From the IMG/VR virus record IMGVR_UViG_3300005859_000005, positions 1 to 30,373 of that record: DNA of 30,373 nt, one strand, 5' to 3'. The notes under the pieces were generated by a model. The model was given only the letters and a program-made list of their open reading frames with translations, did no database searches and had not been told where the DNA came from. Positions 1 to 26,186 of this stretch are shown here, piece by piece (positions within the stretch are counted from its first letter, which is position 1; every line of letters begins with the position of its first letter). Made by a program: the position numbers and the translations under genes.

Positions 1-11
1 ATTGTAAATAC

Positions 12-38
12 AAAGATAAAGATGTCTTTAAATTTGTC
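12..38 (+). promoter_or_regulatory. Rudiviral promoter (purine-rich BRE, TTTAAA TATA box, GTC)
   Basis: AAAGATAAAGATGTCTTTAAATTTGTC, 32 nt before ATG 70; near-identical TATA+GTC copies at 1563-1574, 2103-2114, 2583-2594, 3711-3722. Confidence 0.75.
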
Positions 39-69
39 ATAAGATATATTAAATTTTAAGTGTTTAAAG

Positions 70-327
70 ATGGTCTTAACTAAAAAGATAGAAAAAGTTG
101 AGACATATTTTTGTGAAAAATGTGGTAAAAAATTGCTAGAAAAATTGTCAAACAAAAATAATATAATTTATGATGGATGTGACCATTACATTTGGTATAT
201 TCTTCCATATGATTATTACGAAAAACAACCGACTGTGGAAGGTAAAAAATATGTAGAATGGTTAAAGAAAAATAAAGAAGTCATGGTATATGCTGGAAAA
301 GAGATATATTTTCTAATGAAAAAGTAA
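70..327 (+). CDS. Small putative Zn-binding protein (CxxC...CDHYxW), rudiviral terminal-region family; candidate anti-defence protein
   Basis: CEKC and CDHYIW motifs shared with 1094..1435; own promoter; T-tract after stop. Confidence 0.75.
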   Translation: MVLTKKIEKVETYFCEKCGKKLLEKLSNKNNIIYDGCDHYIWYILPYDYYEKQPTVEGKKYVEWLKKNKEVMVYAGKEIYFLMKK

Positions 328-480
328 TTATAGTTTTTTTGTTTCTAATTTTCAAATTCAGAATTCACATATTTACAGTTTCCAATTTCCTAATTTTGGA
401 AAAATTGAAAGTAGTTTTTCTCAGTTTACAATTCAAAATACTAAGCAGGTCAAAAATATAAGATAACGTTAATGACGTTA

Positions 481-563
481 AAAATAACGAAAAATGCAAA
501 CGTAAAAAAATAGAGATAAATTTATAAAGGGAGAATTACATATGTTATATTGGGGATAAAAAG
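481..563 (+). promoter_or_regulatory. Strong early-type promoter and SD
   Basis: AAAATAACGA...AGAGATAAATTTATAAAGGGAG...TGGGGATAAAAAG-ATG; same layout at 1011-1093. Confidence 0.7.
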
Positions 564-731
564 ATGAAAGTTGTACAAGTCGGACAAACAAAATATTACA
601 TACAAACAAAAGATGATTTAATAAACTTAGCTCAACAGCTTACAAGACAAGGCTACAATATTTCACAGATAGCAGATTTATTAGGCGTGACAGAAAGAAC
701 TGTTAAAAGATATTTGTCCGATTGTTGGTAA
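564..731 (+). CDS. 55-aa HTH DNA-binding protein, SIRV1 ORF56a/SIRV2 gp1-like (absent from ORF track)
   Basis: Hand translation MKVVQVGQTKYYIQTKDDLINLAQQLTRQGYNISQIADLLGVTERTVKRYLSDCW; HTH pattern QIADLLGVTERTVKRYL; GGGGA SD. Confidence 0.9.
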   Translation: MKVVQVGQTKYYIQTKDDLINLAQQLTRQGYNISQIADLLGVTERTVKRYLSDCW

Positions 732-900
732 GTTAGTAAGTTTTTTATTTTCCAAATTTCAAGTTACCAATTTTTTATTTTCTCATTCTACTTTTTCTTT
801 GTTTTTAATTTACAATATAGCCCAGATTATGGTCAATTTTTCTCCTTTTTGGAATAGGAATACAGTAAAGTCAGAAATTCAAATGTTGCATGCAGATGTG

Positions 901-1050
901 GGTTGCAAGGTTGCGAAAAGTTCGCAAATTGTGAGAGAAATGAAAAATGCTAATTAGCAATATGAGCAATATGAGCAATGAGAAAATCAAAGTTGAAAAG
1001 TTGAAAGATGAAAATAACGAGAGATAGAAAGATAAAAAGATAAAGATAAA
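901..1050. repeat. Cluster of short tandem and inverted repeats
   Basis: GGTTGC x2; TTGCGAA-aag-TTCGCAA hairpin 911-927; GCAATATGA x~2.5; AAGTTGAA x2; several AGATA(A/G)A units. Confidence 0.55.
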
Positions 1051-1093
1051 TTTAAATAGGAGAAGAGGGATAAATAATAATGGGGATGGGAAA
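1011..1093 (+). promoter_or_regulatory. Strong early-type promoter and SD
   Basis: AAAATAACGAGAGATA...AAAGATAAATTTAAATAGGAG...TGGGGATGGGAAA-ATG. Confidence 0.7.
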
Positions 1094-1435
1094 ATGAGTA
1101 AAGGAGAAAATGACGAAATAATAATAAAGGAAAAAAGTATTGATAATTCTAGTTATAGATTCAGAAGAGAAATTTACTGTCCAAAATGCCATTGGAGGCT
1201 AATGTCGGCACGTGTTTATATTGATTTAGGAACGCTTGTGATTGATGAAAAATGGGATTGCGATCATTATTATTGGGATATATCGTGGTGTGACCCTAAT
1301 AATTTTGACCCTGATTATTGGAAGTGTAAGCTAATGAAACCGTTATTCGACGAATTAGGGGATAGGATTGTCCTTGTTGTTAGTGCATCAGACGGTTATT
1401 ATTTACTTGTTAAACAGAAGACAAAAAGGAAATAA
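1094..1435 (+). CDS. Cys/Trp-rich putative Zn-binding protein (CPKC...CDHYYW), paralog of 70..327; candidate anti-defence protein
   Basis: Shared motif pattern, C-terminal YYLLVK strand, own promoter and SD. Confidence 0.75.
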   Translation: MSKGENDEIIIKEKSIDNSSYRFRREIYCPKCHWRLMSARVYIDLGTLVIDEKWDCDHYYWDISWCDPNNFDPDYWKCKLMKPLFDELGDRIVLVVSASDGYYLLVKQKTKRK

Positions 1436-1607
1436 TATAGTTATAAGAAATAATATTTTTTATTTTCTTAATTTTTAGTTCTAATTCTATCAATAATTTT
1501 TCTCAATTTACAAATATTAATAAAAAGTTAAAGAAAATTGTAAATGTAAAGGTAAAGAAGGTTTTAAATTTGTCATAATTTCTATATTCTTTTAGGAGGA
1601 AAAGAAA

Positions 1608-2060
1608 ATGTTGGATTTATCAAAAATAAATGAAATAATTAATCAATTAGAAATACTAAAATGTGAAATTATGGAATTACAAGAACAGATAGAAAATCCA
1701 GAATATATAAAACTTAAACAATATTTATTCGAAAATTTGGCTCAAGTTACGAATGACAAGTATATTGGTTCTGTGATTTTTATCGATAATAATAATGTTA
1801 AATATATAACTTTAAATGACTTAGATTCAGGTGATTTTAATTACATTATCTATAATAATAAGGCATATGATTGGTATAAACGTGAATTTTATGATGGTAA
1901 ACTTGTTATATATTATACCGAAGAATATAACATTCCAGAGAATATTATCATGATACTAAAAACAATTCCAGAATCTATTATCAGTAATGCAAAATATTCA
2001 CATTTTAAATTATATTGCCTTTTGAAAAAAAATTATAAATTTGAATTTGTTAAGGTATAA
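1608..2060 (+). CDS. Hypothetical protein with N-terminal coiled coil
   Basis: 150-aa ORF, TATA+GTC promoter, AGGAGG SD. Confidence 0.75.
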   Translation: MLDLSKINEIINQLEILKCEIMELQEQIENPEYIKLKQYLFENLAQVTNDKYIGSVIFIDNNNVKYITLNDLDSGDFNYIIYNNKAYDWYKREFYDGKLVIYYTEEYNIPENIIMILKTIPESIISNAKYSHFKLYCLLKKNYKFEFVKV

Positions 2061-2154
2061 TGTCATTTTTTTGTAATTTTGAAATTTAATGTTAAAAATG
2101 TTTTTAAATTTGTCCTAAGGGATAAAAGGGTTTAAGAGGGGATTAGAGATAATT

Positions 2155-2550
2155 ATGGATGAAAAGTTTATAACATCATTAAAATTAAAACGGAAAACAT
2201 TAATACCAGATTCTGTTTATTCACAACAATTTATATCATCTTTCTTTTTCAATTTTATCGATAATGAGGATAATTATATTGTTCTAACATTTTTTATGAA
2301 AAATGTATTTAGAATATACTTAGATGTCTGGAGAAAACGGGATGAATTTATCGAATATCTGAGAAAGTTTAAGAATGAATTTGAGGATACATATAACTAT
2401 TATCAAAAGCTTCTATTTACTACAAAACAAAATATATTCGAGAAAACTGGAGCCATAGCATGTTTTTTTACTTTTGATGATGATTTAAGAGAAATTTTAA
2501 CAGTATATGTTAATGAATTATTTTGTAATTTTATTGAAAAGCTAAAATAA
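2155..2550 (+). CDS. Hypothetical helical protein
   Basis: 131-aa ORF, TATA+GTC promoter 2103-2114, GAGGGG upstream. Confidence 0.7.
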   Translation: MDEKFITSLKLKRKTLIPDSVYSQQFISSFFFNFIDNEDNYIVLTFFMKNVFRIYLDVWRKRDEFIEYLRKFKNEFEDTYNYYQKLLFTTKQNIFEKTGAIACFFTFDDDLREILTVYVNELFCNFIEKLK

Positions 2551-2627
2551 AGAAAAAATTATGGCAAAAAGATAAAGATGTTTTTAAATTTGTCCTAAAG
2601 AATATACATTTTTAGGTTGATAAAAAG

Positions 2628-3191
2628 ATGGGAAATTTAAGAGTTCAAGTTCAATATAAAGATGGGAAATACCCTTACTTTTTCGATAAGGAGTTAAATA
2701 TAACTGGAATAGGTTCTAGAAATAAAGGTAGAGTTATTTATACGAGCGGGAAATTGGTTAAAGAAGAAAATGGGAAAAGTTATATTGATTTTGAACAGAT
2801 TAGTCCAATAGTTGTTAAACTACAAAATGCTAAAATAACGGTTACACAGTTAGGAACTTTAGTAATAAAACCAGAAGAAGGTTCAACACTTTATGTTGTA
2901 GAAATTCCAGGCGGATATAGGGGAAGTCCTACTACTGAAATTTTATATGGAGATTGCCAGAAGACTAGTATATTAATGTCTCCTGCTGGAAGTTTAGGCG
3001 TTATAGAACATCTTTGGTGTAATGGGAATAGTGAATTTTTGTACAGTATTTCTGGTAGAACTAGGACTGCTGGATTTGGAAGTCTTGTCGATTTATTTGG
3101 AGAAAATTTGAATGGGCGGATAGTAATAAGAGATGGAAATGTTAAGATAACTTATGATAAGGAATTAGATAAATTGTTAGATGATTCTTAA
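2628..3191 (+). CDS. Beta-rich hypothetical protein (GGYRG and SPAGSLG motifs); candidate anti-defence protein
   Basis: 187-aa Gly-rich ORF with own promoter. Confidence 0.75.
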   Translation: MGNLRVQVQYKDGKYPYFFDKELNITGIGSRNKGRVIYTSGKLVKEENGKSYIDFEQISPIVVKLQNAKITVTQLGTLVIKPEEGSTLYVVEIPGGYRGSPTTEILYGDCQKTSILMSPAGSLGVIEHLWCNGNSEFLYSISGRTRTAGFGSLVDLFGENLNGRIVIRDGNVKITYDKELDKLLDDS

Positions 3192-3203
3192 AGAGGGATA
3201 AAA

Positions 3204-3338
3204 ATGGAAATAAAGATAATTTGTTGGGGAAAAGGTGGAGGATTAGTTTATTGGGCAGAAAATTACGAAGAAGAAAGAAAAATTACGGAATATTGTAAAA
3301 AGGAAGGTTTCGAAATTGAATACGAAATAAAACCGTAA
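3204..3338 (+). CDS. 44-aa small protein (absent from ORF track)
   Basis: MEIKIICWGKGGGLVYWAENYEEERKITEYCKKEGFEIEYEIKP; GAGGGA SD; T-tract follows. Confidence 0.65.
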   Translation: MEIKIICWGKGGGLVYWAENYEEERKITEYCKKEGFEIEYEIKP

Positions 3339-3431
3339 GTTAAATGTTCTTTTTTTCTATACCTATTTTTTATCTTCCTGAAAAGATATATATTTGTCAT
3401 AATTTTTCAATTAATTTGGGATGATGAGAAA

Positions 3432-3617
3432 ATGGTTCTGACCGAGGAACAAAAAGAAATTTTAGAAAGAATGTATAATAGAACAGATTACATTATCCGA
3501 AAATATAAAGAATATTTAGATGCATTATCTGAATTTGATAAAACTGGTATATTGAAAATTCATGGGAAAGTTCTTTATGTAAGAAAATACAATAATCAAG
3601 AAAATGAAAATATGTAA
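3432..3617 (+). CDS. 61-aa protein; possible antitoxin mimic (Phd/Doc-type neutralising helix)
   Basis: IIRKYKEYLDALSEFDKTG amphipathic helix; promoter 3387-3398 and GGGATGA SD; function inferred. Confidence 0.55.
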   Translation: MVLTEEQKEILERMYNRTDYIIRKYKEYLDALSEFDKTGILKIHGKVLYVRKYNNQENENM

Positions 3618-3757
3618 TTTTGTTTTCTTTTTTTATGTCAAATTTTTCTCTTGTTTGTTATAATATTACAAATGCTTAAAAAAATTTTGAATTCGAAAGA
3701 TAAAGAGGGTTTTATATTTGTCCTAAAAAATATGTAATTTTAGGGGCGAAAAAGCCC

Positions 3758-4486
3758 ATGACACAAGAAACCCAAGATAGGAAGTTTGAGATAAAGACAA
3801 TAAAAGAAGTAAAATATCTTCCTAATGTTTTCCAACTAAGACATCAAAATGGACAAATATCTACAATAACTACAAGTTATGGAGATTTTATAGATTGTAG
3901 ACCGAAAGAAGACAAGTTTTTTGGATGTCTTGAACTAAGAGATTATGAACTTAAGAGAACAAAAAATGTATATTATGTTCCTGGGATTCCGATATTCTAT
4001 ATAACATTTGAGAAAAGTTTATTCCAAAGTAAAAAACATGTAGAACCTATTGTTACAACAATTTTAACAAATTTTGGACTAATTGATAGAAATTTATTAA
4101 TTACATATACTGGACATGAAATACAAATGTATTCAAGATTCCATAAAGCACAATTACATGAATTTCCATTAATTCATGTCCATAAAAATTTAGAATTTTA
4201 CGAAGTTCCAAAAGCAGACCCTAAAGTTGAATATGACTTTGAGGACACAGACACAATAACAATCTATGATTATGAAATTAAATTTCCAGACATAGTTATG
4301 GTCTCGGAATTATATTCGGAGCCAGGGAAAGCATATCTAGTGTATCCAGAGAATAATATGGAAATAATTGTAACATCTTCCAAAAATGAAGGATTTACAA
4401 TTATGTTACATAAAGATAAATATTATCTTATAACTCATCCAGAAATAGAAGAAGAAAATGAAGGTGAAATGAATGGGAATTCTTGA
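3758..4486 (+). CDS. acrIIIB1: AcrIIIB1-like anti-CRISPR protein (SIRV2 gp48/ORF249 family)
   Basis: C-terminal YEVPKADPK...TITIYDYEIKFP...GKAYLVYPE...KDKYYLITHP matches my recollection of AcrIIIB1; size (242 aa) and position fit. Confidence 0.7.
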   Translation: MTQETQDRKFEIKTIKEVKYLPNVFQLRHQNGQISTITTSYGDFIDCRPKEDKFFGCLELRDYELKRTKNVYYVPGIPIFYITFEKSLFQSKKHVEPIVTTILTNFGLIDRNLLITYTGHEIQMYSRFHKAQLHEFPLIHVHKNLEFYEVPKADPKVEYDFEDTDTITIYDYEIKFPDIVMVSELYSEPGKAYLVYPENNMEIIVTSSKNEGFTIMLHKDKYYLITHPEIEEENEGEMNGNS

Positions 4487-4787
4487 TGGAGATGACGATT
4501 TACTTGGAGATATAACAATAAAAAAACACAAAAATTATTTCGAAATTATATTTACTAAGAGTTACAGATGTAGGATTTCAGATTATAAAGAAAATTATTG
4601 TTTAGTAGAACATATAAATAACGACAGCCTTTCTAATGTTTATTTTATTAATTATGAAGATTTAAAAGTAAAAAATCTTGAAGAATTATTTTGTTTATTA
4701 ATAAAAGAACCTAATAAAATGATAAAAGTATTAACAGAGAATGATTTATCAATAGACAAATTTATTATAAAATATTATAAAGATTAA
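4473..4787 (+). CDS. Hypothetical protein overlapping the acrIIIB1-like gene (SIRV2 gp47-like position)
   Basis: 104-aa ORF, GGTGA SD inside the upstream gene. Confidence 0.7.
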   Translation: MGILDGDDDLLGDITIKKHKNYFEIIFTKSYRCRISDYKENYCLVEHINNDSLSNVYFINYEDLKVKNLEELFCLLIKEPNKMIKVLTENDLSIDKFIIKYYKD

Positions 4788-4806
4788 TTCTTTTTTAGGT
4801 GAGATT

Positions 4807-5037
4807 ATGATAGAAAAAGATGAAAATGGTTATCATTTAATTTATGGTCACGGAAAGATAGATTTAGGAACTGATTTACAAAAAACTATTGATAATATAC
4901 TTGAATTATTGATTAAATTGAGAGAAACAGAGAAATTATTAAATGAACTTAAGATTAGTGATATAGATGTAATAGATATAAAACATATGATAGAATTTTA
5001 TAGCTTTGTTTTATTAGAAATTTATAAGAGTTTATAA
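4807..5037 (+). CDS. Hypothetical protein
   Basis: 76-aa ORF, AGGTGA SD, T-tract at ~5044-5055. Confidence 0.7.
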   Translation: MIEKDENGYHLIYGHGKIDLGTDLQKTIDNILELLIKLRETEKLLNELKISDIDVIDIKHMIEFYSFVLLEIYKSL

Positions 5038-5116
5038 ATCTAATTTTCTTTTTTTCTGAAATTTGGAAATTATATTATTAAGCAATTTTTTAATTGTCAT
5101 TTCCTAACTTTAGTTC

Positions 5117-5311
5117 ATGGAATGTGAAATATGGAAATATTTTATTAGTGGAAAAACTCATGACCTTTATGGACTAATAATTCTCTTTATCCTATCTTTT
5201 ATTCTTTATTTTTCAGTTCAAAATGAGTTTCTGAAATTGATTATAGTTTTTCAACTTATAATTATAACTGGAATTTTTGTAGATTTATGGTCTCATTGTT
5301 TTCATCATTAA
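5117..5311 (+). CDS. Small two-TM membrane protein
   Basis: Two hydrophobic segments; GTC 19 nt before ATG (leaderless pattern). Confidence 0.65.
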   Translation: MECEIWKYFISGKTHDLYGLIILFILSFILYFSVQNEFLKLIIVFQLIIITGIFVDLWSHCFHH

Positions 5312-5333
5312 AAAAACAAAAAAATAGATTAGT

Positions 5334-6044
5334 TTAAAATATCTTTTTTAATCTATCTACAATTTTTTCTATATCTTTTACGAACGATTTTACAGTACTT
5401 ACATCACTTTCTGGAAGTTCTAATATTAGTCTTTGCGTAACAATTTGTTCTAGATTATCAACTAAAAATTGATAGCTTTGGATAATGTAAGGGTCTGGAG
5501 GATAATTTACATAAATTCCAGTCTGATATTCATATTCAATAATTTCTGTAAAGTCATAAACTACAGTAAATAGATTCTGATTTAATGGAGTTACTTCCAA
5601 TAATTGTCCAGACAAACTTTGTAGACCAATAAAACCATATTCTGGAGCTATAATTACAGAGTTTGGCGGAATTTGAAAAACAAAAGCTATAGTTCTATTG
5701 TCCAATTTATTCCTTACAATTGCTAAAGAATAAAGTGGAATATTTTGCAAATTAGTTATAAAGTTTGACAAGTCATTGGCAAAATAAACTTCTGCAAAAG
5801 CATTTCCGAATAAATAGTTTGGAATTGTATAAGTCTGACCATTTAACGTTATTTCTGCCCCTCTGAGAAGTGATACAAGTATTGGGGAATTTGTTTTGTT
5901 TTGCATTATCCAATCTACTCTTCCTTGTGATTGATTGTATGTATAATATAGAGCCAATTTTTCATTTTGCCATAATAAGTTTGCATTTTGTGGTATAGAT
6001 GTATTTACTTTAATTTGTTTTATATCTGTATATGTCTTTCTCAT
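5334..6044 (-). CDS. Hypothetical beta-rich protein (possibly SIRV1 ORF241-like)
   Basis: 236-aa ORF; minus-strand TATA+GTC at 6071-6083. Confidence 0.7.
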   Translation of the reverse strand: MRKTYTDIKQIKVNTSIPQNANLLWQNEKLALYYTYNQSQGRVDWIMQNKTNSPILVSLLRGAEITLNGQTYTIPNYLFGNAFAEVYFANDLSNFITNLQNIPLYSLAIVRNKLDNRTIAFVFQIPPNSVIIAPEYGFIGLQSLSGQLLEVTPLNQNLFTVVYDFTEIIEYEYQTGIYVNYPPDPYIIQSYQFLVDNLEQIVTQRLILELPESDVSTVKSFVKDIEKIVDRLKKIF

Positions 6045-6146
6045 TTTAGTTCAAATTAAGATTAAATTATGACATTTAAAAAACTTGAAAGTAAGGTTAA
6101 AAATATTTTTAAATATGTCATATTTCTAAACAGAATATGATTAGAT

Positions 6147-6668
6147 ATGTATATAGTTTTACGGGAATTGGATAAAGAAAAGTTTAGAAAAAATGTTATT
6201 ACATGGTTAGATGCGGATAATGTTATTGAAAGTTGTTATACTGATTTTAAGTACATTTTAACAGAAACAATAATCCAAATGATTTCTGAAACTGTAGAAA
6301 AAGATGATTGGAATTTACAATATTTTAATGACAAAGAATTAGAAAAATTGTTTAAAGCGTTTATGGAAAATTCTAAAATTACAGTACAATTAGTTAAACA
6401 GATTAATGAGATAAATTATGCATTTGATGAAATTATTGTTGAATTTGATTTATCAGAATTTGAGAAGAAAGAAATTGCAGAAATATATCTTGATAATATA
6501 CTTAATGAATGTCAATATCTAGAAAGATGTATATTTGATAGTTTGGAGGAAAAAAATGTAGATTTAATAGCAGAACTTCTTAATGACCAGACTTATCAAA
6601 TTCTAAGTCCCGAAGAAATAAAGAACAAATTTAAGAGCAAAATAGAGAAAATTATAAATAACGAATAA
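6147..6668 (+). CDS. Acidic helical hypothetical protein, tandem paralog 1
   Basis: Shares ELDK, ESCYT, TIIQM, AFMENS, LSPEEI with the next ORF. Confidence 0.8.
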   Translation: MYIVLRELDKEKFRKNVITWLDADNVIESCYTDFKYILTETIIQMISETVEKDDWNLQYFNDKELEKLFKAFMENSKITVQLVKQINEINYAFDEIIVEFDLSEFEKKEIAEIYLDNILNECQYLERCIFDSLEEKNVDLIAELLNDQTYQILSPEEIKNKFKSKIEKIINNE

Positions 6669-6755
6669 TTTATATTTTAAAAAATCTCTAAATTAAAATT
6701 CAAAGGCATTTTTATATTTGTCATAATTTATAAATTGATTCGAGAGGATAAAAAA

Positions 6756-7304
6756 ATGATAAATCAAATCGAAAATATAGTTTTAAAAGAATTAGATAAA
6801 TATAAATTTAATGAGAATATAGAATCAGGATTAAAATGGGATAATATTAGTGAAAGTTGTTATACAAATTTCAAAGATATTATAGTCAAAACAATAATCC
6901 AAATGGTTCATGAAATTTTAGATGGAAATGATTGGAAAATTAAAGCTTTTGAAAAGAATAAGAAAGAAAAAATATTTAATGCATTTATGGAAAATTCTAG
7001 TTTTGAAGTTTTATTAAGTAAATCAGATAACACATTAAAAAAAGTTATTGTAGAACTTAATTTCACAGAAGACGAGAAAAAGAAAATAGCAAAAACATAC
7101 ATAGACTCATTGTTAGAAGGTTACTATTATTTAGATATATGTATTTTTATTGATTTAGACGAAATAAATGTAAATACAATTTCGAAAGTTTTAAGTGACG
7201 AAGTTTATAGATTGTTAAGTCCAGAAGAAATAATAGAGAAATTTAAAGATAAAATAGAAGAGGCTATTAATGTAATAGAAGGTTATAACGAAGATTTTGA
7301 ATAA
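6756..7304 (+). CDS. Acidic helical hypothetical protein, tandem paralog 2 (start moved to ATG 6756)
   Basis: GAGAGGA SD before ATG 6756; promoter 6711-6722; paralog of 6147..6668. Confidence 0.8.
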   Translation: MINQIENIVLKELDKYKFNENIESGLKWDNISESCYTNFKDIIVKTIIQMVHEILDGNDWKIKAFEKNKKEKIFNAFMENSSFEVLLSKSDNTLKKVIVELNFTEDEKKKIAKTYIDSLLEGYYYLDICIFIDLDEINVNTISKVLSDEVYRLLSPEEIIEKFKDKIEEAINVIEGYNEDFE

Positions 7305-8230
7305 ATGTTTTTTTCTTTTTCTTTCTTTTTCTTTATCATTTTTTCCTTTAATATATCGTTAGCAATTCTATAATTTCTAATTATTTCTAACGTTAATCTG
7401 TCTAGACCCATTTTCCTTAATTTGTTAGCATATCTTGTATATTTGTTATCTATATTCCATTTGTTGTAAAGTAACATGTAAGCGTTAATCATTTCTAGAA
7501 TTTTTCTATTTGTTAAATCATATTCAAATGGGAAGTGAATCTTGTCTAAAAATTCAAATAATTGTTCTTTTTCTTCTTCCGTAATCTTATACCTTTCCCT
7601 CTCTGTTCTTCTATTTCCTACATATTTTCTTCTTCCGTCGAACCAATAGATGTCTCTATATGCCATAGTCTTTGAATATGACGCTGTATCCATACTATCG
7701 GCAAAGTTAAAAGCTTGTAAAAAATATGGAGCTACCATACCAAGAACGTGAAGATAAGGAACTTTCCGTCTTACGTAATAAACCCATGGAAATGTATAGA
7801 TTAGAACTTTCAATTTTGAAGAAGCTACAAGACCTCCTATTGCAAAATAGTAAGTATATTGTTTATAAAAATCTATAGCTTCGTCTACATCTTGAATTGG
7901 ATAGATATGTATGACGGGAATAATTTTTTCTATCCATTCCATTTTTGTGTAAAGATATTCAAAATATTGAAAATTTCGTTTGTCTAGAGGAGAAAACATA
8001 CTGGCAATATCAAGAGAAAAAAAGGCATAAGCGTCCAATCGTTTATATTTTTCTAGAATATCCTTCACAGAAATATGTAGATTGTAAAGTACAATTTGAT
8101 AGCCCCCGCTATCTACCCATGTCTCATTTTTCCATGTTATTTTTTTGAAACGTAATTGGTTAATTAAAACTGGAAAATTTGTCTTTAAAATATAGGTCGA
8201 TGTTGAGCTTAAACCAAAGACAAGTTTCAT
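7283..8230 (-). CDS. TGT/DpdA-like guanine transglycosylase (SIRV2 ORF310-like)
   Basis: VDSGGYQ, SLD, IPVIH, AIGGLV, LHVLG and SMDTAS motifs of the TGT fold. Confidence 0.85.
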   Translation of the reverse strand: MKLVFGLSSTSTYILKTNFPVLINQLRFKKITWKNETWVDSGGYQIVLYNLHISVKDILEKYKRLDAYAFFSLDIASMFSPLDKRNFQYFEYLYTKMEWIEKIIPVIHIYPIQDVDEAIDFYKQYTYYFAIGGLVASSKLKVLIYTFPWVYYVRRKVPYLHVLGMVAPYFLQAFNFADSMDTASYSKTMAYRDIYWFDGRRKYVGNRRTERERYKITEEEKEQLFEFLDKIHFPFEYDLTNRKILEMINAYMLLYNKWNIDNKYTRYANKLRKMGLDRLTLEIIRNYRIANDILKEKMIKKKKEKEKNIYSKSSL

Positions 8231-11811: not shown

Positions 11812-11910
11812 AATATACCATATAAATAATATAAGGAATATTGTGTTGTTTACATGTTTTCATGGGAATTTAAGAACAATAAGGACAATTAATATACATA
11901 ATATGATATA
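11812..11910 (+). promoter_or_regulatory. Modular upstream element, copy A
   Basis: Ungapped match to the reverse complement of 17201-17299; first 32 bp identical to the reverse complement of 26155-26186. Confidence 0.75.
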
Positions 11911-17200: not shown

Positions 17201-17299
17201 TATACAATATTATGTATATTATGTGATGTTATTGTTCTTAACTTTTTACGTTTAATCAAAAACAACACAATATACCTTATATTATATATATGGCATATG
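17201..17299 (-). promoter_or_regulatory. Modular upstream element, copy B
   Basis: Inverted copy of 11812-11910; same 143-nt distance to ATG 17156. Confidence 0.75.
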
Positions 17300-26091: not shown

Positions 26092-26154
26092 TATATATTT
26101 CGATATTCACATATAAAAATCTTTCGATTATCTTTTACATATTATTCCTCAAAG

Positions 26155-26186
26155 CAATATTCCTTATATTATTTATATGGTATATT
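26155..26186 (-). promoter_or_regulatory. 32-bp dyad, copy C of the modular upstream element
   Basis: Exact reverse complement of 11812-11843. Confidence 0.75.

What the first reader, a model, noticed from the sequence alone, without database searches (positions are those of the whole stretch)
1..5040. Putative anti-defence island of promoter-bearing small genes
Seen: eleven co-oriented small genes (two not in the ORF track); eight have their own near-identical promoter, and most have an SD and a T-tract after the stop. Known: rudiviral anti-CRISPRs (AcrID1, AcrIIIB1) sit in terminal variable regions under strong early promoters. Inference: the uncharacterised ORFs (70, 1094, 1608, 2155, 2628, 3204) are good candidates for new anti-CRISPR or anti-defence proteins.
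Basis: partly seen in the sequence, partly recalled or inferred. Interest (0 to 1): 0.68.

Follow-up and report, generated by a model that had tools for sequence, protein, structure and literature searches.

The report
Rudivirus early anti-defence gene arm
This is the variable end of a hot-spring archaeal rod-shaped virus genome, a row of small genes each driven by the same strong promoter, three of which are relatives of known host-defence blockers or their regulator; it is a further example of an arrangement already described in 2024, with a few uncatalogued candidate genes.

Summary
Window 1-5040 carries eleven co-oriented small genes in eight transcription units. Five promoters are near-identical: a purine-rich BRE, TTTAAATT and GTC. 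One is a degenerate copy, and two (Aca8, w1094) are a second variant. SD-like motifs and oligo-T tracts are strongly enriched.

The window is a partial Usarudivirus-like genome from a metagenome. Three genes have characterised relatives:
- 564-731 is Aca8, the HTH regulator.
- 3758-4486 is an AcrIIIB1 homologue.
- 3432-3617 is 72% identical to SMV1 gp44, a validated Phd-like antitoxin that blocks host Doc.

- 1608 belongs to the published predicted family ADG.18, and 2628 to ADG.06.
- 70 and 1094 are C3H zinc-ribbon paralogues distantly related to ADG.12.
- 2155 and 3204 are uncatalogued but real, conserved genes.

A matrix trained on this window picks almost only listed ADGs in SIRV4/7/8/9/11. 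So this is the "early anti-defence regulon" of Bhoobalan-Chitty et al. 2024: a new member of a known kind.

Early timing and the function of every unnamed gene remain inferred. The island is cut at the contig's left end and runs on to 7304.

The parts
9..46 (+). Class-A promoter of gene 70: purine-rich BRE, TTTAAATT, then GTC
   Evidence: Leave-one-out matrix score 35.5 bits. Repeat families D1 and D3. TATA start to ATG is 43 nt.
70..327 (+). w70, 85 aa: small C3H zinc-ribbon protein (CxxC...CxH), a distant relative of ADG.12
   Evidence: Pairwise E 1e-6 to SIRV8 gp60, which is ADG.12. Paralogue of w1094 (E 0.003). C15, C18, C37 and H39 are invariant in alignment A3. Orthologues at 89-91% in L016 and L017. 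T7 tract at 334-340.
514..535 (+). Class-B promoter of aca8 (TTTATAAA, no GTC)
   Evidence: The pattern occurs only here and at 1044-1065. Window 481-535 is 80% identical to 1011-1064.
564..731 (+). Aca8 homologue, a 55-aa HTH regulator and putative repressor of the regulon
   Evidence: Pfam HTH_7 at 3.6e-8. phrog_7067 at 1.7e-27. 53% identical to the 55-aa form of SIRV2 gp01, E 4e-24. PDB 2X48 at E 4e-14. SIRV7 gp50 is listed as Aca8.
1044..1065 (+). Class-B promoter of gene 1094
   Evidence: The whole Aca8-to-next-gene spacer is 79% conserved in L016 and L017.
1094..1435 (+). w1094, 113 aa: second C3H zinc-ribbon paralogue
   Evidence: Alignment A3. Two database hits: its own 99% cluster and one 69% relative among 5.8 billion clusters. 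No match in isolate genomes. L016 and L017 carry a different paralogue of the family at this position.
1545..1582 (+). Class-A promoter of gene 1608
   Evidence: leave-one-out 25.5 bits.
1608..2060 (+). ADG.18-family protein, 150 aa, function unknown
   Evidence: phrog_12890 at 5.9e-48. 53-54% identical to SIRV8 gp57 and SIRV9 gp53, which are listed as ADG.18.
2085..2122 (+). Class-A promoter of gene 2155
   Evidence: leave-one-out 29.7 bits.
2155..2550 (+). w2155, 131 aa: uncatalogued conserved helical protein
   Evidence: 48 metagenomic clusters at 53-92% identity and no Pfam family. No match in the seven reference rudivirus records searched (six whole genomes and part of isolate V3). AF2 gives an all-alpha model, pLDDT 64.5, with no fold match. 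It lies next to AcrIIIB1-like, ADG.12-like and Aca8 genes in L015 and upstream of ADG.06 in L024.
2565..2602 (+). Class-A promoter of the 2628-3204 operon
   Evidence: leave-one-out 37.6 bits. The homology block with L016 begins exactly here.
2628..3191 (+). ADG.06-family protein, 187 aa: beta-sandwich with no informative fold match
   Evidence: phrog_13554 at 3.4e-80. 60-62% identical to SIRV4 gp48, SIRV7 gp48 and SIRV11 gp44, listed as ADG.06. 58 clusters. AF2 pLDDT 92.9. Best PDB Z 4.5, generic Ig-like.
3204..3338 (+). w3204, 44 aa: small gene co-transcribed with ADG.06
   Evidence: SD motif GAGGGAT, 12 nt after the ADG.06 stop, followed by a T7 tract. Four protein variants on about 15 contigs, directly after the 187-aa gene in the four contigs examined. 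dN/dS about 0.11-0.16. No relative in isolate genomes.
3369..3406 (+). Degenerate class-A promoter of gene 3432 (TATA/GTC half only)
   Evidence: Matrix score 20.3 bits when included in training. 39-61% identical to the five strong copies.
3432..3617 (+). ADG.17-family, Phd-like viral antitoxin homologue, 61 aa
   Evidence: 72% identical to SMV1 gp44 and 84% to an ATSV protein. SMV1 gp44 neutralises and binds host Doc SiL_0731 (PMC11065993). The invariant EFD...KIHGKV core is retained. phrog_12592 at 1e-32.
3693..3730 (+). Class-A promoter of the 3758-4473-4807 operon
   Evidence: leave-one-out 32.2 bits. The same motif precedes the AcrIIIB1 homologues of SIRV4, 7, 8, 9, 11 and V3.
3758..4486 (+). 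AcrIIIB1 homologue, 242 aa
   Evidence: BLASTP E 3e-14 to SIRV2 gp48 over residues 11-229. 33-36% identical to SIRV7 gp49 and SIRV8 gp56, listed as AcrIIIB1. phrog_6092 at 1.9e-37.
4473..4787 (+). w4473, 104 aa, unknown; overlaps the AcrIIIB1 homologue's end by 14 nt
   Evidence: SD motif AGGTGA. 69% relative in L016 and 34% relative in isolate V3. No family hits.
4807..5037 (+). w4807, 76 aa, unknown; last gene of the operon
   Evidence: SD motif AGGTGA and a T7 tract after the stop. 80% relative next to Aca8 in L019. Only a sub-threshold HamA hit (E 0.006).
5117..5311 (+). 64-aa hydrophobic protein conserved across Usarudiviruses; marks the inner edge of the variable arm
   Evidence: 80-86% identical in SIRV4, 7, 8, 11 and V3. 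phrog_26913 at 4.7e-21.
5334..6044 (-). Conserved rudivirus/lipothrixvirus gene (SIRV7 gp46 homologue) that interrupts the island
   Evidence: 77% identical to SIRV7 gp46. phrog_6678 at 5e-107. Matches in SIFV and SIFV2.
6090..6668 (+).
   Evidence: Matrix score 15.5 bits. phrog_12570 at 5e-74. 64-68% identical to SIRV11 gp49, SIRV4 gp53 and SIRV8 gp07, which sit in their terminal arms.
6693..7304 (+). Class-A-like promoter (6693-6730) plus a 182-aa paralogue (6756-7304)
   Evidence: Matrix score 24.3 bits. 49% identical to 6147-6668. Its relative SIRV4 gp45 has the same motif at 28.3 bits.

Best explanation
Window 1-5040, continuing to 7304, is the variable early-gene arm of a Usarudivirus-like rudivirus. 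It is a regulon of self-contained cassettes. Each cassette is a purine-rich BRE, a TATA box (TTTAAATT), the rudivirus-specific GTC, a 5' leader of roughly 20 nt with an SD-like motif, one to three small ORFs, and an oligo-T terminator.

Inferred mechanism:
- Host TBP, TFB and RNA polymerase fire these strong promoters as soon as the DNA enters the cell.
- The AcrIIIB1 homologue blocks type III-B CRISPR-Cas and, by a preprint, type I-A as well.
- The Phd-like protein replaces the host antitoxin and keeps the Doc toxin silent.
- The remaining products (ADG.06 beta-sandwich with its 44-aa partner gene, ADG.18, two zinc-ribbon paralogues, helical w2155, w4473, w4807) most likely act on other host defence or takeover targets.
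- The 55-aa HTH protein Aca8, made from its own variant promoter, then shuts the regulon down.

Shown here: the anatomy, the homologies, and the specificity of the motif. Inferred: the timing, repression by Aca8, and every activity.
For: 1. Virus identity and position. The arm is collinear with the terminal arm of SIRV7. Core genes are 75-92% identical, while arm genes are 36-69% identical or absent.
2. The extended promoter motif is confined to the arm: 7 hits at 16 bits or more, none expected, all between 9 and 6730. Leave-one-out scores are 25-38 bits.
3. Cross-check on isolates. The matrix trained on the window finds, in SIRV4, 7, 8, 9, 11 and V3, almost only promoters of AcrIIIB1, ADG.18, ADG.17 and ADG.01 genes plus SIRV4 gp45. 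Those families are the published ADG lists.
4. Homologues: Aca8, AcrIIIB1, SMV1 gp44-like antitoxin at 72%, ADG.06 and ADG.18.
5. Published biology. In SIRV2, aca8, acrID1 and acrIIIB1 are expressed immediately after infection from such a shared promoter, and 25 accessory genes are dispensable in a CRISPR-free host (PMC11065993). The GTC element was already known (Kessler 2004, cited in PMC5569661).
6. The unnamed ORFs are real genes. The w2155 family has 48 clusters. w3204 has dN/dS of 0.11-0.16. The zinc-ribbon profile finds 61 representatives.
7. Terminators and SD-like motifs are enriched.
Against: - No expression data exist for this virus. The only sequencing run that holds it is DNA.
- The TATA+GTC core also precedes core genes across the genome, so part of the motif is a generic rudiviral promoter.
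- No structural or family match gives a mechanism for ADG.06, ADG.18, w2155, w70, w1094, w3204, w4473 or w4807.
- Small zinc-ribbon and HTH proteins could be transcription regulators or host-takeover factors rather than defence inhibitors.
- The authors of the ADG method admit that false positives are possible.
- The AcrIIIB1 homologue is only 21% identical to the tested SIRV2 protein.
Confidence: 0.75

Rival explanations
1. The arm is a generic accessory or host-takeover arm. The shared motif is simply the strong rudiviral promoter. Most unnamed genes would then be regulators, cell-cycle factors or other takeover factors, with anti-defence limited to the two or three recognisable genes.
For: TATA+GTC is genome-wide and known from most SIRV1/2 promoters. 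The zinc-ribbon proteins (w70, w1094) and the HTH protein are DNA-binding-type folds. Stray notes reading 'host cell cycle regulation?' sit beside ADG.06, ADG.17 and ADG.18 rows in the published table. There are no fold matches to any known inhibitor.
Against: The extended motif, with its BRE part, is restricted to the arm. In isolates it picks the listed ADG genes and only one core-region gene. The major capsid gene does not carry it. The recognisable genes are all of defence-related families.
Confidence: 0.17
2. The arm as written is partly an assembly mosaic. Co-occurring rudivirus strains in the metagenome share promoter and terminator modules, so the contig may join cassettes that do not lie on one molecule.
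For: Summed contig depth along the arm is very uneven, from about 23 to 775. Alternative joints exist, for example 1521 to 2568, and many contigs match only partly. Related contigs carry the same cassettes in other combinations.
Against: Independently assembled contigs with 0-2 differences bridge 1084-1592, 1563-2523, 2494-2648, 3035-3498 and 3716-4822. The sub-order w2155, ADG.06, w3204, ADG.17, AcrIIIB1-like recurs in L024 from another data set. The order w70, Aca8 and spacer recurs in L016 and L017. Exact repeats between promoters are shorter than typical assembly k-mers.
Confidence: 0.06
3. Some of the small ORFs are chance open frames in AT-rich DNA rather than genes.
For: The window is 75% A+T, so stop codons are frequent and short ORFs need support. 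w3204 is only 44 aa. w70 lacks an SD-like motif. w1094 has a single relative.
Against: Every one of the eleven has at least one relative with conserved length. w3204 is under purifying selection. C3H residues are invariant in the zinc-ribbon family. Promoter, SD and terminator punctuation fits the ORFs.
Confidence: 0.02

Closest known systems
Early anti-defence gene (ADG) regulon of rudiviruses (Bhoobalan-Chitty et al. 2024, Nat Commun, PMC11065993); type example: the SIRV2 termini with aca8, acrID1 and acrIIIB1
   Same: Small single genes near a genome end, each with a shared BRE/TATA regulatory sequence. An Aca8 HTH gene and an AcrIIIB1 homologue are present. The coding sequences are highly divergent and the regulatory sequences are conserved.
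   Different: There is no AcrID1 homologue. The motif is the Usarudivirus version with GTC and scores nothing in SIRV2. Aca8 and its neighbour use a distinct promoter variant. Three genes ride in operons. The w2155, w3204, w4473 and w4807 families were not found among the published ADG members checked here; the supplement was searched by protein accession and family name, not by sequence.
Terminal arms of Usarudivirus SIRV4-SIRV11 and isolates V3/V60/V65 (Yellowstone)
   Same: The same families occur: Aca8, AcrIIIB1, ADG.06, ADG.17, ADG.18 and the phrog_12570 paralogues. They share the promoter motif and the same inner boundary at the gp46 homologue.
   Different: Gene order is shuffled. SIRV7 runs ADG.17, gp51, Aca8, AcrIIIB1, ADG.06, ADG.01. 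Here the order is Zn, Aca8, Zn, ADG.18, w2155, ADG.06, w3204, ADG.17, AcrIIIB1, w4473, w4807. Arm proteins are only 36-69% identical, and ADG.01 and ADG.04 are absent.
SMV1 gp44 / ADG.17, a viral Phd-like antitoxin that inhibits the host Doc toxin
   Same: The 3432 product is 72% identical over 54 residues and keeps the invariant core.
   Different: Its promoter is the weakest copy in the arm. In L016 the orthologue has no promoter and follows ADG.06 directly. Binding to a Doc toxin was not tested here.
Bacteriophage acr-aca operons
   Same: Both have a strong early promoter, small fast-evolving inhibitor genes and an HTH repressor encoded in the locus.
   Different: Here most genes are monocistronic cassettes, each with its own copy of an archaeal BRE/TATA promoter, rather than one operon. 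Aca8 is unrelated to the bacterial Aca families, and its operator is unknown.

Membership tests
ADG regulon (criteria of PMC11065993) | A predicted strong promoter (BRE plus TATA box) upstream of a single gene | tested here: met
   Genes 70, 1608, 2155, 2628 and 3758 have a purine-rich BRE plus TTTAAATT or TTTATATT 43-52 nt before the ATG. Gene 3432 has only a weak copy. Genes 3204, 4473 and 4807 are operon genes without a promoter.
ADG regulon (criteria of PMC11065993) | The regulatory sequence around the promoter is shared among genes of the same genome | tested here: met
   71-82% pairwise identity over 38 nt against 31% at random. Leave-one-out scores of 25-38 bits against a shuffled maximum of 15.
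ADG regulon (criteria of PMC11065993) | Expression immediately after infection | not testable with these tools
   No RNA run holds the sequence. The virus is known only from metagenomes.
Aca8 | Sequence homology to the 55-aa HTH protein SIRV2 gp01/gp54 | tested here: met
   53% identity, E 4e-24. PDB 2X48 (SIRV1 variant XX, 55-aa protein) at E 4e-14. HTH_7 at 3.6e-8.
Aca8 | Binds and represses the shared early promoters | not testable with these tools
   This is only proposed in the literature too. No operator could be recognised here.
AcrIIIB1 | Full-length homology to SIRV2 gp48 | tested here: met
   E 3e-14, 21% identity over residues 11-229 of 242. 36% identity to SIRV7 gp49, which is listed as AcrIIIB1. 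phrog_6092 at 1.9e-37.
AcrIIIB1 | Inhibits type III-B (Cmr) interference | not testable with these tools
   This needs S. islandicus infection assays with acrIIIB1-deleted SIRV2.
ADG.17 (Phd-like viral antitoxin) | Homology to SMV1 gp44 | tested here: met
   72% identity, E 6e-20. 28 invariant columns shared with SMV1, SIRV7, SIRV8 and L016 members.
ADG.17 (Phd-like viral antitoxin) | The conserved Asp reported to contact the Fic motif of Doc (D39 in the paper's numbering) | tested here: inconclusive
   An invariant Asp (D36 here, in the EFD motif) is retained. The paper's numbering could not be mapped with certainty onto the annotated SMV1 ORF.
ADG.06 | Homology to listed members (SIRV4 gp48, SIRV7 gp48, SIRV11 gp44, SIRV9 gp51) | tested here: met
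   56-62% identity over 182-184 residues. Family listing.
ADG.18 | Homology to listed members (SIRV9 gp53 as reference, SIRV8 gp57, SIRV11 gp46) | tested here: met
   53-54% identity to SIRV8 gp57 and SIRV9 gp53; 41% to SIRV11 gp46.
ADG.12 | Homology to SIRV8 gp60 / SIRV9 gp56 | tested here: inconclusive
   w70 is 36% identical over 39 residues only, pairwise E 1e-6. w1094 links only through w70 and the profile. The CxxC...CxHY motif is shared, so this is better called a superfamily relation.
AcrID1 | Sequence or profile similarity to AcrID1-family proteins | tested here: not met
   No tblastn hit of any arm protein to the SIRV2 AcrID1 paralogues. No NCBIfam match.

The most novel reading that the evidence does not exclude
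The conserved terminator-promoter modules may also be the recombination substrate that shuffles self-contained anti-defence cassettes between co-infecting rudiviruses, as a homology-driven, integron-like exchange. Within this pool, the C3H zinc-ribbon family (w70, w1094, ADG.12, with up to three copies per arm and members on a fusellovirus-like contig) would be a multi-copy inhibitor family playing in Usarudiviruses the role that the expanded AcrID1 family plays in Icerudiviruses.
Probability: 0.2. Interest if true: 0.6.

Novelty: new member of a known kind. Interest (0 to 1): 0.38.

Why it matters
It shows that the regulatory-sequence rule for finding archaeal anti-defence genes carries over to an uncultivated rudivirus. 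A promoter matrix from this one contig recovers the published gene sets in isolates.

It also adds concrete, cheaply testable candidates:
- a conserved helical family (w2155, 48 clusters);
- a 44-aa gene tightly linked to ADG.06;
- a confident beta-sandwich model for ADG.06 that has no informative structural match;
- a zinc-ribbon superfamily that links ADG.12 to genes in other Sulfolobales viruses.

Few archaeal anti-defence proteins have been characterised, so such candidates are useful. The concept itself is not new.

Tried and rejected
- Fold search for w2155: the AF2 model was only moderate (pLDDT 64.5) and found nothing in BFVD or PDB.
- Fold search for ADG.06: the model was confident, but the best hits were generic Ig-like sandwiches (Z at most 4.5, TM at most 0.42). 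No function can be drawn from them.
- Complex prediction of ADG.06 with the 44-aa w3204 product returned no verdict. It is evidence neither for nor against binding.
- Atlas feature searches for w1094 and w1608 gave no usable lead.
- PDB sequence searches for ADG.06, ADG.18 and the AcrIIIB1 homologue returned only chance-level rows.
- NCBIfam found nothing for ten arm proteins.
- w2155 against SIRV2 ORF131a (ADG.13, the same length) showed no similarity.
- Viral-contig scans with the AcrIIIB1 homologue and with w4473 found no close relatives.
- L018 is a chance CxxC match in an unrelated, tailed-phage-like contig and was discarded.
- A possible small ORF in the 362-nt spacer after aca8 (about 829-957) was rejected as a gene because L016 deletes it. 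Rfam finds no RNA family in 1-7400.
- No RNA-seq run holds the arm, so early expression could not be tested.
- The weak HamA hit of w4807 (E 0.006, below the cut-off) was not pursued.

Full report
WHAT THE WINDOW IS. The window is a single IMG/VR virus record of 30,373 bp with no end repeats and about 25% G+C. Its nearest named relatives are the Yellowstone Usarudiviruses SIRV4-11, at about 75% nucleotide identity over parts of the first 6 kb. A protein map against SIRV7 shows that the window is collinear, in inverted orientation, with SIRV7 positions 9136-33479. Core proteins are 75-92% identical. Homologues of SIRV7 gp01-gp17 are missing (one weak match to gp15 lies on the gp25 homologue), so the record is a partial genome despite a CheckV estimate of 97%. 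The region in question corresponds to the right terminal arm of SIRV7 (gp47-gp52).

THE OBSERVATION. Eleven + strand ORFs fill 70-5037.

Eight have an upstream TATA element at a nearly fixed distance from the ATG: 43-47 nt, and 52 nt for gene 2155. Five of these promoters (genes 70, 1608, 2155, 2628, 3758) share 71-82% identity over 38 nt. Their consensus is close to AAAGATAAAGATGTTTTTAAATTTGTCMTAA. Random 38-mers of this genome share 31% (maximum 63%). Leave-one-out matrix scores are 25-38 bits, whereas the best of 50 shuffled genomes reaches 15. The promoter of 3432 keeps only the TATA/GTC half. The promoters of 564 and 1094 are a second variant without GTC that occurs nowhere else in the window.

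Genes 3204, 4473 and 4807 lie 12, -14 and 19 nt behind the preceding gene and carry good SD motifs (GAGGGAT, AGGTGA, AGGTGA), so they are operon genes. A run of six or more T follows seven of the eight unit ends within 45 nt, against 8% of background windows.

The description is therefore correct, with three refinements. "Near-identical" applies to five promoters, not eight. The short TATA+GTC core is genome-wide (28 hits against 8 expected) and is the known rudiviral element of Kessler et al. 2004 (cited in PMC5569661), so only the extended motif marks the arm. The extended motif also precedes two more genes at 6147-6668 and 6756-7304.

WHAT THE GENES ARE.
- 564-731 is Aca8. It is 53% identical to the 55-aa form of SIRV2 gp01/gp54, matches the solved 55-aa SIRV1 protein 2X48 at E 4e-14, and is an HTH protein.
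- 3758-4486 is an AcrIIIB1 homologue. It scores E 3e-14 to SIRV2 gp48 over nearly its whole length and is 33-36% identical to the proteins listed as AcrIIIB1 in SIRV7/8/9/11.
- 3432-3617 belongs to ADG.17. It is 72% identical to SMV1 gp44, which was shown to neutralise and bind the host Doc toxin (PMC11065993). The invariant core is retained.
- 2628-3191 is ADG.06, at 56-62% identity to the listed members. 1608-2060 is ADG.18, at 53-54%.
- 70-327 and 1094-1435 are paralogous small proteins with invariant CxxC...CxH residues. w70 is weakly related to ADG.12, that is SIRV8 gp60. A profile of nine such proteins finds 61 representatives at E 1e-3 or better in 1.84 billion proteins, mostly 75-130 aa. 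Related arms carry up to three copies, and one member lies on a fusellovirus-like contig.
- 2155-2550 has 48 metagenomic relatives and none in the seven reference rudivirus records searched (six whole genomes and part of isolate V3). Its model is all-helical with moderate confidence and no fold match.
- 3204-3338 (44 aa) has four protein variants on about 15 contigs. In the four contigs examined it sits directly after the ADG.06 gene. Its dN/dS is 0.11-0.16, so it is a real gene.
- 4473-4787 and 4807-5037 have relatives only in other arms (L016, V3, L019).
- None of the arm proteins resembles AcrID1.
- ADG.06 gives a confident beta-sandwich model (pLDDT 92.9) whose best structural neighbours are generic Ig-like domains (Z at most 4.5).

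IS THE MOTIF MEANINGFUL? I trained a matrix on the window's five strong promoters and scanned the isolate genomes. At 14 bits or more it hits 2-4 sites per Usarudivirus genome. Nearly all are the promoters of AcrIIIB1, ADG.18, ADG.17 and ADG.01 genes and of SIRV4 gp45, a relative of 6756. One weaker site lies in the core, and SIRV2 has none. Those genes are the ones Bhoobalan-Chitty et al. listed as anti-defence genes by their own per-genome motif analysis. This is an independent cross-check that the window's motif is the Usarudivirus early/ADG regulatory sequence.

MECHANISM. By analogy with SIRV2, the shared strong BRE/TATA promoters would give an immediate burst of the arm's products. In SIRV2, aca8, acrID1 and acrIIIB1 are transcribed immediately after infection from such promoters and fall after about 1 h, and Aca8 is proposed as the repressor (PMC11065993). 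The AcrIIIB1 homologue would then inhibit type III-B and, per a preprint, type I-A interference. The Phd-like protein would hold the host Doc toxin in check. Aca8 would then close the regulon. Aca8 and the zinc-ribbon gene behind it share a separate promoter variant and a spacer that is 79% conserved across otherwise divergent arms. That hints at a separately regulated sub-module. All of this is inference: no RNA data exist for this virus.

MODULARITY. Related contigs carry the same cassettes in other orders and combinations. Nucleotide homology blocks between arms begin and end at the promoter and terminator modules. Examples are 2567 at the start of the 2628 promoter and 3742 just past the 3758 promoter. 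Stretches of 80-130 nt of terminator plus promoter match upstream of unrelated genes in other genomes. The source-type metagenome shows very uneven summed depth along the arm and alternative joints, but contigs with 0-2 differences bridge most gene junctions of the window. This fits cassette exchange through the conserved intergenic modules. It does not prove it, and it leaves a small chance that the contig is partly a mosaic.

COMPARISON AND VERDICT. The arrangement is the early anti-defence regulon described for rudiviruses and other Sulfolobales viruses in 2024. It meets both computational criteria of that work and contains three of its named families plus three predicted ones. It differs in lacking AcrID1 and in gene order. 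It also has a second promoter class and holds four families I did not find among the published ADG members checked here (w2155, w3204, w4473, w4807). It is a new member of a known kind. Of the six listed ORFs, two belong to already-predicted families, two are distant kin of a third, and two are new candidates. None has a demonstrated or structurally inferable activity.

Noticed in passing
window 1-30373 (whole record): The record lacks homologues of SIRV7 gp01-gp17, about 9 kb. That arm includes the Cas4-like nuclease, ORF436, the ssDNA-binding protein, the pyramid protein, SvtR and the dUTPase. The record also lacks terminal inverted repeats. It is therefore a partial genome although CheckV rates it 97% complete.
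   Followed up: partly
window 6090-7304: Two tandem paralogues (173 and 182 aa, 49% identical, phrog_12570) each carry a class-A-like promoter. They lie between the gp46 homologue and the tRNA-ribosyltransferase gene. Their relatives sit in the terminal arms of SIRV4/8/9/11, and the five accessions checked are absent from the published ADG table.
   Followed up: partly
window 5117-5311: A 64-aa hydrophobic protein is 80-86% conserved in SIRV4, 7, 8, 11 and V3. No CDS is annotated at the matching coordinates in the SIRV4, 7 and 11 records. It matches only the C-terminal third of phrog_26913.
   Followed up: no
window 732-1093; L016:3232-3481; L017:2800-3145: The spacer between aca8 and the next gene (362 nt in the window) is 79% conserved across divergent arms. 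It includes a class-B promoter and an AACGAGAGATAG stretch. L016 has a deletion of about 110 nt in its middle.
   Followed up: partly
window 11812-11851 (+), 17260-17298 (-), 26150-26186 (-): A 37-39-nt element (ATATACCATATAAATAATATAAGGAATATTGTGTTG) occurs three times at 92-95% identity. Each copy lies upstream of a core gene (homologues of gp41, gp38 and gp28). It may be a second, non-early regulatory motif (pairs I2 and I3).
   Followed up: no
window 4807-5037: The w4807 product has a sub-threshold match to Pfam HamA, a Hachiman defence component (E 0.006, 16.9 bits against a cut-off of 25), over residues 3-50. This is probably chance.
   Followed up: no
L023:3573-3842 (JGI 3300005223 contig): A member of the C3H zinc-ribbon family lies on a fusellovirus-like contig, among small genes beside SSV1 D-63-like and VirArc_Nuclease genes. 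The family therefore crosses virus families.
   Followed up: partly
L016:1-2500 and L017:1-1990: Close relatives of the arm extend 2-2.5 kb further left than the window and hold at least two more small genes (81 and 117 aa). The window's island is therefore cut off by the contig end.
   Followed up: partly
window 1-5400 in run X1: The hot-spring metagenome holds many rudivirus variants. Summed contig depth ranges from about 23 (w1094) to about 775 (gp46 side), and there are alternative joints such as 1521 to 2568, which would drop the ADG.18 and w2155 cassettes.
   Followed up: partly
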